Sequence record: MK250021.1
Strand: one strand, 5' to 3'
Length of the DNA stretch: 64,000 bases
The notes beneath the pieces were generated by a model. The model did no database searches and was not told the DNA's origin. It saw only the letters and a program-made list of their open reading frames with translations. Position 1 is the stretch's first letter. The number at the start of each line of letters is the position of its first letter. Made by a program: the position numbers and the translations under genes. This document shows positions 28,913 to 63,992 of this stretch, in pieces.

Positions 28913-30169
28913 TTATTCATAAGAATTTTCATAATCTTTTAATTTTTCTTTCGCATATTCTATAGTTATATGAAATTCTTTTTCATTAGACGCCGGTAAA
29001 TTATACATTGCATCATCCATAAGATTCTCTACTATTCCTCTTAACCCCCTAGCGCCTAATTTATTCTTAATAGATAACTTAACTATATAATCATAAACTT
29101 CATCATCTATTATAAGTTCAATACCATCTAATTTAAACAACTTCTTAAATTGTTTAATAATAGCATTTTTCGGTTCTGTAAGAATTCTCTTCAAATCATC
29201 TTCAGTTAAAGGATTAAGATATGTAATAATAGGAAGTCTACCTATTAATTCTGGAATCAAACCATAATTCTTTAAATCTTCCGCATTTACATATTTAAAT
29301 ATGTTTTCTTTATTATCAGAAAAATCTTTCTTATCCTTTGATACAAATCCTAATGTAGATTTATTAAGTCGTCTCTCTATAATTTTATTCAAACCAACAA
29401 AAGCACCACCACAAATAAATAAAATATTTTTTGTATCAACCTCTACCATTTTAGCATCCGGGTGTTTTCTTCCTCCCTTTGGTGGAACATTTACAACAGA
29501 ACCTTCAATTATTTTAAGTAATGCTTGTTGAACGCCTTCACCTGAAACATCTCTTGTTATAGATGGATTTCCTCCGGATTTCCTTGCAATCTTATCAATC
29601 TCATCAAGAAATACTATTCCGTGTTCTGCTTTCTTAACATCATAATCACATGCTTGGAGAAGTCTTGTGATTGCAGTCTCAACATCATCACCAACGTATC
29701 CAGCTTCAGTGATAGAATTAGAATCCACTATACTAATTGGTACATCTAACATTTTAGCAATAGACTTAACCAAAAGTGTTTTACCAGTACCAGTGTCTCC
29801 CAAAAGTATACAGTTACTCTTCTCAATCTCTACATCATCAAATCCTTTTTGCTTAATTCTCTTATAATGATTATAAACTGCAACTGCTAACCTTTGTTTC
29901 GCTTTATCCTGACCAATTACATATTGATCCAAAAATTCTTTAATCTCTGTAGGTTTTTTTACATCATCCTTATGGAAATTATCATCTGGTGATAAAAACT
30001 GTGTATTATGATTTACTATACTCAAATTCATATTGTAAATCTGGTCACAACATTCATTACAAATACTTCCATATTCACCATTAAAAAGTAATGCAACTTG
30101 GTCTTTCGTCTTACCACAAAATGAACACTTATTTTCTTTTTTATTTGTATCTTTCTTTTTTTCTGCCAT
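28913..30169 (-). CDS. clpX: ATP-dependent Clp protease ATP-binding subunit ClpX
   Basis: CSFCGK zinc-binding domain, [56 protein letters not shown]. Confidence 0.97.
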
Positions 30170-33230: not shown

Positions 33231-34001
33231 ATGGCAGATAGTAAAAATAATACAAAAAAGGTAAAAACTGGTGTAGTTGAGTCTATTGATGATCCAACAT
33301 GTTCAGGAAGAGTAAAAGTTAGGGTTGCAGGTTTACATGATAACATATCAACAGAGAATTTACCATGGTGTAATTACGCGGGAAGTGGTATGTTTTCAGG
33401 TTCAGGTGGTGGATAGATTTCTATACCACGTGTAGGAACAAAGGTAAGAGTTAGATTTGCATAGGATGATGTAAACTCCATGGAATGGTATGGAACAAAT
33501 ACATTGGACAGAAAACTTTCAGAGGAATTGGCGTCTGATTATGCAGGTTCATAGGTTCTTCTTTATGACTCGGAATATGATTTGTCTATTAAGTTTCAAC
33601 CAGGTTCTGGTTTAGCTTTATATTATAAAGGTTCTTATATGTAGATGACACCTGATAATACTATAACTATTCATTATGGTCCTGACGAGACAACAGGTGT
33701 ACAAATATAGTTAACAGACGGTAAGGTTTATATATAGGCACCATAGTAGATTAATATAACATCAGGTAATGAAGTTAATATAGAGGGAAAGGTTATAACA
33801 TTAAATGGAACATCCGCTGTCCGTATAAAAGGAACAACACCTAATACATGCGCTGTTAATGCTACACAACTTATGACATTGTTATAGACAATGGCTGCTA
33901 ATATTGATACAAAATTAGGTTAGTCAAAATCTGGTATATGCGCTGCTACTGTTTCAGGTTCTAAGGAGAAAATAATGAATCAACATATCCTTTATATTTA
34001 A
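33231..34001 (+). CDS. T4 gp5-like baseplate hub/spike protein (OB-fold + beta-helix, no lysozyme domain), 256 aa
   Basis: GVVESIDDPTCSGRVKVRVAGLH..LPW..GGGQISIPRVGTKVRVRF; Q from TAG; TAA 33999. Confidence 0.9.
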
Positions 34002-62872: not shown

Positions 62873-62963
62873 TATTTTTTGAAAAAAAGTTTCAAAAATG
62901 AGAGACTTTTGAAAAAAATTTAGATATATATAATAAAGAAATAATTTTTAAAAACAAAAAACT

Positions 62964-63077: not shown

Positions 63078-63186
63078 TACGTTTATAAATAAAGAAATAA
63101 TAGTAAAACGATTAATATATTTTAAATCTTGAAACATTCTGCAATAAACAGAGAGTTTCAAGATTTTTTTCATTTATTATAGAAAT

Positions 63187-63277
63187 ACACAGATGTGCGA
63201 GTGGTTGATGCAGTTGGTCTCCAAAACCAATAACGGTATATATGTACTGTTCGAGGGTTCGAATCCTTCTCTGTGTG
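63187..63277 (+). tRNA. tRNA with CCA (Trp) anticodon and long variable arm
   Basis: Acceptor ACACAGA/TCTGTGT, D-arm TGCG..TGCA, anticodon stem TTGGT-CTCCAAA-ACCAA, about 21-nt variable arm, GAGGG-TTCGAAT-CCTTC, G73; no encoded CCA end. Confidence 0.85.
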
Positions 63278-63469
63278 CAAATTAAAAATTTATACAAATA
63301 AAATAAGAATAATATGACAAAGTTAATACGACATATACATAAGCATCGAATACAGTTATAAATTGTTGATCTTATATTATACATTATTATATATAGGATT
63401 GACATAAGAAATCATGTTCCTATATGTTTAATGATATATTGTTGTATTATATTTAGGAACACTCCATAG

Positions 63470-63544
63470 TGGGGTGTAACTCAAAGGTCAGAGTGGTATT
63501 CTTAATAAGAATACTGGTAGTGGGTTCAACTCCCACCACCCCAA
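63470..63544 (+). tRNA. tRNA with AAT (Ile) anticodon and 6-bp anticodon stem
   Basis: TGGGGTG/CACCCCA acceptor, ACTC/GAGT D-stem, GTATTC-TTAATAA-GAATAC, GTGGG-TTCAACT-CCCAC, A73. Confidence 0.75.
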
Positions 63545-63568
63545 CTAAAAATAAATTAAATTAGAAAA

Positions 63569-63817
63569 ATGGAAAAGATTAATTTAAAATCTTTAGTTAA
63601 GGGTACAGCAGACATTGTTTGTGTAAATTCAGGTGGTATTGTTGTTTATAACATTACATCAGATGATAATCATATATATTAGTTAGAAATAGATTTATCA
63701 GATAAACATGATGTAGGTGAAACAGCAGCATTCTTGCCACATTATGATAGAGCTCTTATTCTTATGAGATGGATTAGACGTTCTATAGATAATGATACTA
63801 TAATAAAGATTAAATAA
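63569..63817 (+). CDS. Hypothetical protein (82 aa, one TAG)
   Basis: ATG 63569 to TAA 63815; C-terminal LMRWIRRSI. Confidence 0.7.
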
Positions 63818-63869
63818 AAATATTTTTGATTTTTTATCAGACAAATTTTTTTATTTGAAATATATTATG

Positions 63870-63877
63870 TATCTTTG
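63870..63877 (+). promoter_or_regulatory. Bacteroidetes-type -7 promoter element
   Basis: atgTATCTTTGtattgttaataaa. Confidence 0.75.
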
Positions 63878-63992
63878 TATTGTTAATAAAATAACAAACA
63901 AAAATTGTTCTTTGAAATATTGATAACAAAATAAGAAAATAAAAATCTTGAAATTTTTTCTTAGAATATTTTTTTAATTCAAAATAAAGATG

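What the first reader, a model, noticed from the sequence alone, without database searches (positions are those of the whole stretch)
63187..63277. CCA-anticodon tRNA on a class II (long variable arm) body
Seen: a clean 7/5 cloverleaf with anticodon CCA, a D-loop AGTGGTTGA and an 8-bp variable stem (AACGGTAT/GTACTGTT). Known: bacterial tRNA-Trp has a short variable loop. Long arms mark Ser/Leu/Tyr/Sec tRNAs, and SerRS uses the long arm plus G73 while ignoring the anticodon. A1-U72 and G73 fit Trp identity. Inference: either an unusual tRNA-Trp (possibly evading host anticodon nucleases) or a Ser-charged tRNA that misreads UGG.
Basis: partly seen in the sequence, partly recalled or inferred. 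Interest (0 to 1): 0.7.

Follow-up and report, generated by a model that had tools for sequence, protein, structure and literature searches.

The report
Long-armed tryptophan tRNA of Lak megaphage
A giant gut phage carries a tryptophan tRNA built on the long-armed body normally used by serine, leucine and tyrosine tRNAs; the same design is frequent in phage tRNA clusters, almost absent from bacterial genomes, and I found no paper on it.

Summary
Window 63187-63277(+) is a 7/5 cloverleaf tRNA with anticodon CCA, an 8-bp variable arm, A1-U72 and G73 (ARAGORN; Rfam tRNA 48.6 bits). The window is a Lak-B-type Prevotella megaphage.

- **Conservation:** the gene is invariant in all Lak contigs found except at the tip of the variable arm, where changes keep the pairing. 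Flanks are 81-86% identical.
- **Only tRNA-Trp:** it is the single tRNA-Trp in a complete Lak genome. That genome encodes no TrpRS or SerRS.
- **Body versus acceptor end:** the core matches a Bacteroidales tRNA-Ser. The acceptor end (A1-U72, C2-G71, G73) matches Bacteroidales tRNA-Trp and lacks the G1-C72/G2-C71 pairs found in over 90% of phage tRNA-Ser.
- **Distribution:** at least 82 distinct long-arm CCA tRNAs occur in IMG/VR contigs, nearly all with U72 and G73. The same pattern hits only 22 contigs in 185,579 bacterial and archaeal genomes.
- **Codon use:** TGG codons in Lak genes behave like Trp.

Most likely it is a Trp-charged UGG decoder on a class II scaffold. Serine mischarging is disfavoured but not excluded. 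The idea that the arm protects against tRNA-targeting enzymes is inference only. Charging and expression were not tested.

The parts
63187..63277 (+). tRNA gene, positions 1-73: anticodon CCA on a class II (long variable arm) body. No CCA end is encoded (the next bases are CAA).
   Evidence: ARAGORN; Rfam RF00005 at 48.6 bits; invariant outside the arm tip in all Lak copies found.
63187..63193 (+). Acceptor stem 5' strand ACACAGA. It pairs with 63270-63276 (TCTGTGT), giving A1-U72, C2-G71 and A3-U70. Discriminator G73 is at 63277.
   Evidence: A1-U72, C2-G71 and G73 are shared with 17 Bacteroidales tRNA-Trp. The pattern is unlike tRNA-Ser.
63196..63212 (+). D arm: stem TGCG/TGCA and 9-nt loop AGTGGTTGA. 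The loop is Ser-type, 8 of 9 bases identical to Bacteroidales tRNA-Ser (AGTGGTCGA). Pair 11:24 is G-C.
63214..63230 (+). Anticodon arm TTGGT-CTCCAAA-ACCAA, with anticodon CCA at 63221-63223. The 13-mer GGTCTCCAAAACC equals the tRNA-Trp anticodon arm of the host order.
   Evidence: The 13-mer is present in 135 of 151 Bacteroidales genomes and lies in their tRNA-Trp.
63232..63251 (+). Variable arm: 8-bp stem AACGGTAT/GTACTGTT and loop ATAT, flanked by U44 (63231) and C48 (63252). The proximal 5 bp are invariant. The distal 3 bp and loop vary with compensatory changes.
63253..63269 (+). T arm GAGGG-TTCGAAT-CCTTC.
   Evidence: The TTCGAAT loop is the one seen in host-order tRNA-Ser and tRNA-Tyr.
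63124..63173 (+). 18-nt inverted repeat (63124-63141 / 63149-63166, 7-nt loop) followed by a T run. It looks like a terminator and ends about 14 nt before the tRNA.
   Evidence: and the sequence. The consensus scan did not call it because it has too few G-C pairs.
63470..63545 (+). Neighbouring tRNA of the same small cluster, called Ile(AAT) here and Ile(TAT) in Lak-A2 and Lak-C1.

Best explanation
This is a functional, phage-encoded tRNA-Trp that decodes UGG.

- **Charging.** Host (Prevotella) TrpRS charges it with tryptophan, using the three main bacterial Trp determinants it carries: anticodon C34-C35-A36, discriminator G73 and the A1-U72 first pair. The phage encodes no TrpRS.
- **Body.** Its core is not that of a tRNA-Trp. 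The D loop, junction nucleotides, the 8-bp variable arm with one unpaired 3' nucleotide, and the TTCGAAT T loop are those of a Bacteroidales-type tRNA-Ser. The simplest origin is a class II tRNA gene whose anticodon and acceptor end were switched to Trp identity. The Ser-specific acceptor and D-stem pairs were lost in the process.
- **3' end.** The CCA end must be added after transcription, because none is encoded.
- **Why the arm is kept (inferred, not shown).** The arm leaves the surfaces read by TrpRS untouched but makes the molecule structurally unlike the host's compact tRNA-Trp. The anticodon cannot be varied, because there is a single Trp codon and TrpRS reads all three anticodon bases. 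A changed body is therefore the only way for a phage tRNA-Trp to escape proteins that inactivate or deplete host tRNA-Trp during infection.

The Lak gene is one member, with the longest arm, of a large phage-restricted set of long-arm tRNA-Trp genes.
For: **Shown**
- **Real and constrained.** Rfam 48.6 bits. There are no differences outside the arm tip among Lak-A, Lak-B, Lak-C and metagenome copies, against flanks that are 81-86% identical. Changes in the arm are compensatory.
- **Only Trp tRNA.** It is the single tRNA(CCA) among 31 tRNAs in the complete Lak-A2 genome. Devoto et al., Table S2, list one Trp per Lak genome.
- **No phage synthetase.** No PF00579 (TrpRS/TyrRS) or PF00587 (SerRS family) match in Lak-A2.
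- **Trp-like ends.** A1-U72, C2-G71, G73 and the 13-nt anticodon arm are shared with Bacteroidales tRNA-Trp.
- **Wider set looks like Trp.** Of 81 distinct long-arm CCA tRNAs in viral contigs, 80 have G73 and 74 have U72 (A-U 43, G.U 31), while pairs 2:71 to 7:66 vary freely. That is the profile of 87 short phage tRNA-Trp, not of 117 phage tRNA-Ser (G1-C72 91%, G2-C71 95%, A3-U70 89%). Among the 14 long-arm Trp with a Ser-like arm geometry, none has G1-C72.
- **Phage-restricted.** At least 119 viral contigs carry the pattern, against 22 contigs in 185,579 species genomes. The long-arm share is 19 of 117 viral matches and 0 of 32 matches in 29 sampled Bacteroidota genomes. In Collinsella the long-arm copy sits in an 11-tRNA array, next to a normal chromosomal tRNA-Trp elsewhere.
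- **Codon behaviour.** TGG is the most conserved codon class between Lak-B and Lak-A2 orthologues (36 of 41, against 65% for Ser) and never exchanges with Ser.

**From the literature** (PMC9976931)
- Bacterial Trp identity rests on the anticodon, G73 and the first base pair.
- C2-G71 is an antideterminant against E. coli SerRS.
- G73 is an antideterminant against LeuRS and TyrRS.

**Context for the inferred role**
- Phage tRNAs are known to rescue translation from defence tRNases (PMC10264068, PMC11555353, PMC11464382).
Against: - No aminoacylation, expression or proteomic data. The run search found no usable RNA data.
- Acceptor pairs 3:70 to 5:68 (A-U, C-G, A-U) differ from host tRNA-Trp (G-C, G-C, G-C). 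In B. subtilis these pairs contribute to TrpRS recognition.
- The core is strongly Ser-like, and SerRS is reported to read the shape and length of the arm rather than its sequence. The Lak arm (8 bp, one unpaired 3' nucleotide) is more Ser-like than that of most other phage long-arm Trp tRNAs, which are Tyr-like. Some serylation therefore cannot be excluded.
- Nothing here shows that TrpRS tolerates the arm, other than the evolutionary persistence of such genes.
- The protective role of the arm has no direct support. I identified no tRNA-Trp-specific nuclease of Prevotella or of Lak.
- The long-arm share depends strongly on the T-loop type: 16% with TTCGAAT, 2% with TTCGAGT.
Confidence: 0.6

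Rival explanations
1. Same Trp-charged UGG decoder, but the long arm has no function of its own. It is a tolerated leftover of the gene's origin from a class II tRNA (anticodon shift from a tRNA-Ser-like gene). It stays well paired only because a misfolded arm would be harmful.
For: - The core is nearly identical in layout to host-order tRNA-Ser.
- The closest cultured-phage relative of another long-arm Trp (L064) is annotated tRNA-Ser.
- The arm tip is free to vary.
- Long-arm versions of many other class I isotypes occur at a few percent in phage tRNA arrays, as expected if phage tRNA genes often switch identity.
- Long-arm Trp tRNAs go with the class II-type TTCGAAT T loop.
Against: - The architecture has persisted without loss across the Lak-A, -B and -C clades, and the proximal 5 bp are invariant.
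- Very diverse lineages keep arms of different geometry.
- Such genes are almost absent from bacterial chromosomes, which argues for phage-specific selection rather than mere tolerance.
Confidence: 0.22
2. The tRNA is charged, wholly or substantially, with serine by host SerRS through its long arm and G73. It then inserts Ser at UGG.
For: - Ser-type D loop, junction nucleotides and arm geometry, with an arm at least as long as host tRNA-Ser arms.
- G73 and A3-U70 are present.
- SerRS ignores the anticodon and reads mainly arm size and tertiary shape (PMC9976931).
- Precedents exist: nematode nev-tRNAs (PMC4033280) and allo-tRNAs (PMC5389517).
- Ser-type CCA tRNAs with GGAGAG acceptor stems do exist in some bacterial MAGs.
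Against: - It lacks G1-C72 and G2-C71, which are kept in over 90% of phage tRNA-Ser and in host-order tRNA-Ser.
- It carries C2-G71, an antideterminant against E. coli SerRS.
- Pair 11:24 is G-C here, where the host-order tRNA-Ser have C-G.
- Its acceptor end is the one of host tRNA-Trp.
- TGG codons in Lak genes are the most conserved class and never exchange with Ser codons.
- It is the phage's only tRNA for Trp.
Confidence: 0.1
3. It is not used in translation. It could be a decoy, regulator, primer or decaying gene that merely keeps a tRNA shape.
For: - No expression or charging data.
- The host already has its own tRNA-Trp.
- No clear promoter match directly upstream.
Against: - All universally conserved tRNA features are intact: U8, A14, G18-G19, T54-C56 and A58, a 7-nt anticodon loop with U33 and A37, and a full acceptor stem.
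- The anticodon, discriminator and first pair are the specific Trp set.
- The whole molecule shows complete sequence conservation.
- It lies in a tRNA cluster in a phage that, according to its describers, also encodes a CCA-adding enzyme.
Confidence: 0.05

Closest known systems
Canonical bacterial tRNA-Trp (class I), e.g. that of Bacteroidales
   Same: Anticodon CCA with loop CUCCAAA; the identical 13-nt anticodon arm core; A1-U72, C2-G71 and G73.
   Different: The host genes are 74-76 nt with a 5-nt variable loop and a class I D arm (GCTCAATTGGTAGAG). The Lak gene has a 22-nt variable region and a class II D arm. Acceptor pairs 3:70 to 7:66 also differ.
Bacterial tRNA-Ser (class II)
   Same: The core layout is the same: U8-G9, D loop AGTGGTYGA, G26, U44, a long paired arm followed by one unpaired C48, T loop TTCGAAT, G73 and A3-U70.
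   Different: It has no G1-C72 or G2-C71. Pair 11:24 is G-C instead of C-G. The anticodon is CCA instead of NGA or GCU. The arm is 8 bp, against 5-7 bp in the host-order genes.
Nematode nev-tRNAs and bacterial allo-tRNAs (class II bodies with anticodons of class I amino acids)
   Same: A long variable arm combined with an anticodon of a class I amino acid (PMC4033280; PMC5389517).
   Different: In those, the acceptor identity stays that of the class II amino acid, so they are charged with Ser, Leu or Ala and act as missense or nonsense suppressors. Allo-tRNAs also have 8/4 or 9/3 helices. Here the helices are 7/5 and the acceptor end matches the anticodon's amino acid.
Irregular phage tRNAs reported by Mukai et al. 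[quoted passage not shown]
   Same: Phage tRNA clusters are known to hold tRNAs with non-standard architecture for a class I amino acid (His).
   Different: Those were defined by an 8/4 acceptor/T geometry. That paper does not mention any tRNA-Trp or CCA anticodon.
Phage tRNAs that resist defence tRNases (T5 tRNA-Tyr against Retron-Eco7 PtuAB, T5 tRNA-Lys against PARIS AriB, mycobacteriophage tRNAs against VapC)
   Same: A phage-encoded copy of a host tRNA that keeps its decoding function but differs from the host version (PMC11555353, PMC11464382, PMC10264068).
   Different: The differences described there are point changes, mostly in the anticodon loop. Here the loop is identical to the host's and the whole core is exchanged. 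No matching nuclease is known, so this is an analogy and not a demonstrated membership.

Membership tests
Bacterial tRNA-Trp (TrpRS substrate) | Anticodon C34-C35-A36 in a 7-nt loop | tested here: met
   CTCCAAA loop, CCA at 63221-63223.
Bacterial tRNA-Trp (TrpRS substrate) | Discriminator G73 and an A1-U72 first pair | tested here: met
   Same as in 17 Bacteroidales tRNA-Trp. These are the identity elements listed in PMC9976931.
Bacterial tRNA-Trp (TrpRS substrate) | Class I body (4-5-nt variable loop) | tested here: not met
   The variable region is 22 nt with an 8-bp stem. The host-order genes are class I.
Bacterial tRNA-Trp (TrpRS substrate) | Aminoacylation with Trp by TrpRS | not testable with these tools
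   Needs an in vitro charging assay or charged-tRNA sequencing.
Bacterial tRNA-Ser (SerRS substrate) | Long variable arm in the Ser-type orientation (one unpaired 3' nucleotide, Ser-type D loop) plus G73 | tested here: met
Bacterial tRNA-Ser (SerRS substrate) | Acceptor stem G1-C72, G2-C71, A3-U70 | tested here: not met
   It has A1-U72, C2-G71 and A3-U70. The three Ser pairs occur in 91%, 95% and 89% of 117 phage tRNA-Ser and in the host-order genes. C2-G71 is a reported antideterminant against SerRS.
Bacterial tRNA-Ser (SerRS substrate) | C11-G24 in the D stem | tested here: not met
   G11-C24 here. The host-order tRNA-Ser have C11-G24.
allo-tRNA | 8/4 or 9/3 acceptor/T-stem geometry | tested here: not met
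   The geometry is 7/5.
Bacterial tRNA-Sec | 8/5 geometry, 6-bp D stem, anticodon UCA | tested here: not met
   7/5 geometry, 4-bp D stem, anticodon CCA.
Phage long-arm tRNA(CCA) group (defined here) | CCA anticodon, variable region of at least 9 nt, U72 and G73, carried on viral contigs or in tRNA arrays | tested here: met
   The Lak gene has the longest arm stem of the 59 members that ARAGORN drew with a simple arm hairpin.

The most novel reading that the evidence does not exclude
Phages carry a widespread and so far undescribed class of tRNAs. In these, the acceptor end and anticodon of a class I amino acid sit on a class II (long-arm) core. Trp shows this clearly (2-16% of viral tRNA(CCA) matches, depending on T-loop type), and Cys, His, Lys, Asn, Met and Ile show it at a few percent. 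The exchanged core would be an adaptation that lets the phage copy keep working while host tRNAs of the same specificity are cleaved, modified or depleted during infection. It would be a body-level counterpart of the known anticodon-loop escape mutations.
Probability: 0.3. Interest if true: 0.8.

Novelty: new variant of a known kind. Interest (0 to 1): 0.6.

Why it matters
Textbook tRNA classification ties long variable arms to Ser, Leu, bacterial Tyr and Sec. A tRNA that joins a Ser-type body to Trp-type ends shows that TrpRS, EF-Tu and the ribosome probably accept a class II body for Trp.

- **Identity rules.** It tests how SerRS and TrpRS compete for one molecule, and which features stop mischarging.
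- **Phage-host conflict.** If the arm is protective, it extends the known ways in which phage tRNAs evade tRNA-targeting defences to changes in the whole body. That would help explain why large phages carry near-complete tRNA sets.
- **Annotation.** Isotype predictors and curators should expect class II bodies for class I amino acids in phage tRNA arrays. They should separate these from true missense tRNAs, such as the Ser- and Leu-type CCA tRNAs seen in some MAGs.
- **Engineering.** Naturally orthogonal-looking tRNA scaffolds are useful starting points for genetic code engineering.

Tried and rejected
- **Expression.** The run search found no RNA run holding the locus. The four runs I laid matched only AT-rich low-complexity stretches at 62903-62945 and 63844-63894, not the tRNA. 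No conclusion on expression.
- **Own genome.** No whole genome is held for the window. I used the complete Lak-A2 record instead.
- **Link to stop-codon recoding.** My ORF-length heuristic flagged most loci under any relaxed code, so it was uninformative.
- **Trp positions in ClpX.** The Lak ClpX homologue aligns well to solved ClpX structures, but the aligned part holds no Trp, so it is useless for the TGG test.
- **Cultured phages.** BLAST of five representative long-arm Trp tRNAs found only three things: one uncultured gut phage, the Brevundimonas jumbo phages (an 82-nt tRNA-Trp with an 8-nt variable region), and a Ruegeria phage tRNA-Ser. No well-studied model phage with a full long-arm Trp was found.
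- **RNA repair genes.** RtcB was not found in Lak-A2. Several RNA-ligase-family matches exist, but they are only circumstantial.
- **Promoter motif.** A Bacteroidetes-type motif (ATGTATCTTTG) is not significantly enriched in the window.
- **Rejected readings.** tRNA-Sec and allo-tRNA are ruled out by the 7/5 geometry. Charging by LeuRS or TyrRS is unlikely because of G73. An intron is unlikely because the insert lies in the variable region and is paired.
- **Literature.** Ten full-text searches found no description of long-arm tRNA-Trp. The library lacks most subscription journals, so prior description cannot be excluded.

Full report
**What the window is.** The last 2 kb of the window are 99.7% identical to Prevotella phage Lak-B2 and Lak-B4, and about 86% identical to Lak-A1, A2 and C1. 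These are the ~540-550 kb megaphages of Devoto et al. 2019, which read TAG as a sense codon. The ORF just downstream (63570-63817) has an in-frame TAG, consistent with that. No whole genome is held for the window, so I used the complete Lak-A2 record as a proxy.

**The observation.** ARAGORN finds tRNA-Trp(cca) at 63187-63278.
- 7-bp acceptor and 5-bp T stem;
- D loop AGTGGTTGA;
- anticodon loop CTCCAAA;
- 8-bp variable stem AACGGTAT/GTACTGTT with loop ATAT;
- a single unpaired C before the T arm;
- A1-U72 and G73, with no encoded CCA.

Rfam's tRNA model gives 48.6 bits (E 7.4e-9), with the arm as a 20-nt insertion in the variable region. The folding-energy z-score alone is modest at -2.08.

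**Conservation.**
- Nine copies were compared: Lak-A2, Lak-C1, one of four IMG/VR contigs, five metagenome contigs and the window. They differ only in the distal three pairs and the loop of the variable arm.
- Three arm-tip variants exist, and all keep the helix. Two pairs changed on both sides and one changed on one side.
- The surrounding DNA between Lak-B and Lak-A2 is 81-86% identical. Zero changes in the roughly 80 remaining positions therefore indicate strong purifying selection.

**Place in the phage's tRNA set.**
- Lak-A2 has 33 Rfam tRNA matches and 31 distinct ARAGORN tRNAs. The long-arm gene is the only tRNA(CCA).
- Devoto et al. list exactly one 'Trp CCA' per Lak genome (tRNAscan score 55.6-57) and do not comment on its length.
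- Lak-A2 has no match to the TrpRS/TyrRS family (PF00579) or to the SerRS-type class II core (PF00587). Host enzymes must therefore charge it. The same supplement reports a phage CCA-adding enzyme.

**Which synthetase? Comparison with the host order.**
- Seventeen tRNA-Trp genes from Bacteroidales genomes are all class I (74-76 nt). They read ACGGGNN...NNCCCGT-G, that is A1-U72, C2-G71 and G73, and contain the 13-mer GGTCTCCAAAACC. That 13-mer is present in 135 of 151 genomes sampled.
- The Lak tRNA shares exactly these elements: the anticodon arm core, A1-U72, C2-G71 and G73.
- The class II tRNAs of one complete Bacteroidales genome show that the rest of the Lak molecule is built like tRNA-Ser. 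Shared features are U8-G9, D loop AGTGGTCGA (8 of 9 identical), G26, U44, a long helix followed by one unpaired C, and T loop TTCGAAT.
- The Lak gene departs from tRNA-Ser precisely where serine identity is reported or conserved. The acceptor stem is ACACAGA instead of GGAGAGN. Pair 11:24 is G-C instead of C-G.
- According to the identity review PMC9976931:
  - bacterial Trp identity rests on the anticodon, G73 and the first pair;
  - Ser identity rests on the arm's size and shape, reinforced by acceptor-stem pairs;
  - C2-G71 acts as an antideterminant against E. coli SerRS;

**A much larger family.** I scanned IMG/VR contigs for GGTCTCCAAAACC, then 14-40 nt, then GGTTCGAATCC.
ARAGORN called 117 tRNA(CCA) of 81-92 nt, of which 82 are distinct.
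- Their acceptor stems are very diverse. Even so, 80 of 81 have G73 and 74 of 81 have U72 (A-U 43, G.U 31).
- Short phage tRNA-Trp have the same profile. Phage tRNA-Ser from the same loci have G1-C72, G2-C71 and A3-U70 in 91%, 95% and 89%.
- Arm geometry differs among class II types:
  - phage tRNA-Ser have 4-7 bp and one unpaired 3' nucleotide;
  - phage tRNA-Tyr have 3 bp and three unpaired;
  - most long-arm Trp are Tyr-like (32 of 59);
  - 14 long-arm Trp, the Lak gene among them, are Ser-like.
- None of those 14 has G1-C72.
- One gut-phage example (L092) even has the Bacteroidales tRNA-Trp acceptor stem ACGGGTG/CACCCGT on a class II D arm and variable arm.

**Phage-specific distribution.**
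- The same long-gap pattern hits only 22 contigs among 185,579 bacterial and archaeal species genomes. Those hits are a mixture:
  - Trp-type tRNAs;
  - Ser-type tRNAs with GGAGAG acceptors, in Acidobacteria and other MAGs;
  - Leu-type tRNAs with A73.
- With the gap opened to 9-39 nt, 19 of 117 viral matches were long-arm. All 32 matches in the 29 matching genomes of a 200-genome Bacteroidota sample were class I.
- With a TTCGAGT T loop, the viral long-arm share is only 2 of 118. The overall share therefore lies somewhere between about 2% and 16% and depends on the anchor used.
- In Collinsella aerofaciens, the long-arm copy lies in an 11-tRNA array, while a normal tRNA-Trp sits elsewhere on the chromosome.
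- Long versions (80 nt or more) of other class I isotypes, keeping their own acceptor hallmarks, make up 2.8-9% of such tRNAs in these arrays. They are commoner where a long-arm Trp is present: 57 of 626 against 28 of 823. The isotypes include Cys, His, Lys, Asn, Met and Ile.
- Among cultured phages I found only partial cases, such as the Brevundimonas jumbo phages with an 82-nt tRNA-Trp.

**Meaning of the codon.** I aligned 18 orthologous ORFs (3,847 residues, 72% identity) between the window and Lak-A2.
- TGG positions are the most conserved class: 36 of 41 (88%), against 65% for Ser.
- The five replacements are H, H, L, R and Y. None is S.
- This is the normal behaviour of Trp, and it argues against substantial Ser insertion at UGG. 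The sample is small.

**Mechanism.**
- *Shown:* the gene is real and constrained. It is the phage's only tRNA(CCA). It carries Trp determinants and lacks Ser acceptor determinants. It belongs to a phage-restricted family.
- *Inferred:* host TrpRS charges it.
- *More weakly inferred:* the class II core is kept because it makes the phage tRNA unlike host tRNA-Trp for proteins that attack or deplete host tRNAs. The anticodon loop cannot be altered without losing TrpRS recognition and the only Trp codon.
- Known cases of phage tRNAs rescuing translation from defence tRNases give the precedent. None of the papers I read discusses variable arms or Trp in this role.
- The main alternative for the arm is neutral inheritance from a tRNA-Ser-like ancestor.

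**Limits.**
- No charging or expression data could be obtained.
- The family counts rest on two exact sequence anchors and on capped scans.
- The host genomes are anonymous Bacteroidales, not identified Prevotella.
- The literature search covers open-access papers only.

Noticed in passing
window 63470-63545 (+); L001:2107-2180: The next tRNA is called Ile(AAT) in this Lak-B-type window. It has a 6-bp anticodon stem, or alternatively a 9-nt loop CTTAATAAG. Its orthologue in Lak-A2 and Lak-C1 is an ordinary tRNA-Ile(TAT). An A34 anticodon is unusual for bacteria-type systems.
   Followed up: partly
window 63570-63817 (+): A small ORF with an in-frame TAG at 63681-63683, consistent with the TAG-as-sense code reported for Lak phages.
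   Followed up: no
window 63124-63173 (+): An 18-nt inverted repeat plus a T run ends about 14 nt before the tRNA. It looks like a terminator, so the tRNA may need its own promoter or read-through. No convincing promoter match lies directly upstream.
   Followed up: partly
Lak-A2 record MK250019, about 33,800-33,915 (in loci L014, L027, L036): The Lak tRNA-Cys(GCA) is 81 nt, with a class II-type D arm (GCCTGAGTGGTCGAAGGG), a variable region of about 11 nt and U73 kept. It is a second class I amino acid on a class II-like body in the same phage.
   Followed up: partly
IMG/VR loci L037-L152, L197-L294 and L319-L435: tRNAs of 80 nt or more for Cys, His, Lys, Asn, Met, Ile, Gln, Arg, Pro and Thr, keeping their own acceptor hallmarks, make up about 3-9% of class I isotype tRNAs in phage tRNA arrays.
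   Followed up: partly
L161, L166, L170, L159 (Ser-type); L163, L165, L169 (Leu-type): Bacterial MAG contigs (Acidobacteria, Acidimicrobiia, Dehalococcoidia and others) carry class II tRNAs with a CCA anticodon. Their acceptor ends are tRNA-Ser-like (GGAGAG.., G73) or tRNA-Leu-like (A73). They are candidates for true UGG-to-Ser or UGG-to-Leu missense tRNAs.
   Followed up: no
G350 (Collinsella aerofaciens) C22:207009-208035; L303: An 11-tRNA array contains a long-arm tRNA-Trp (class I D arm plus an inserted 4-bp hairpin). A normal tRNA-Trp lies at C1:35656-35728.
   Followed up: partly
Lak-A2 record MK250019: 166932-167561, 213377-213730, 401639-402163, 361427-362128: Four matches above cut-off to the RNA-ligase family PF09414, one of them beside the main tRNA cluster. 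There is no RtcB match. This may point to RNA repair.
   Followed up: no
Lak-A2 loci L019-L021: Lak-A2 carries two tRNA(CUA) with Gln-like bodies and one tRNA with anticodon UUA (which would read UAA), alongside the reported TAG reassignment.
   Followed up: no
window 28913-30169 (-): A full-length ClpX homologue (zinc finger plus AAA+ domain; E 7e-125 to solved ClpX) with no recoded codons.
   Followed up: partly
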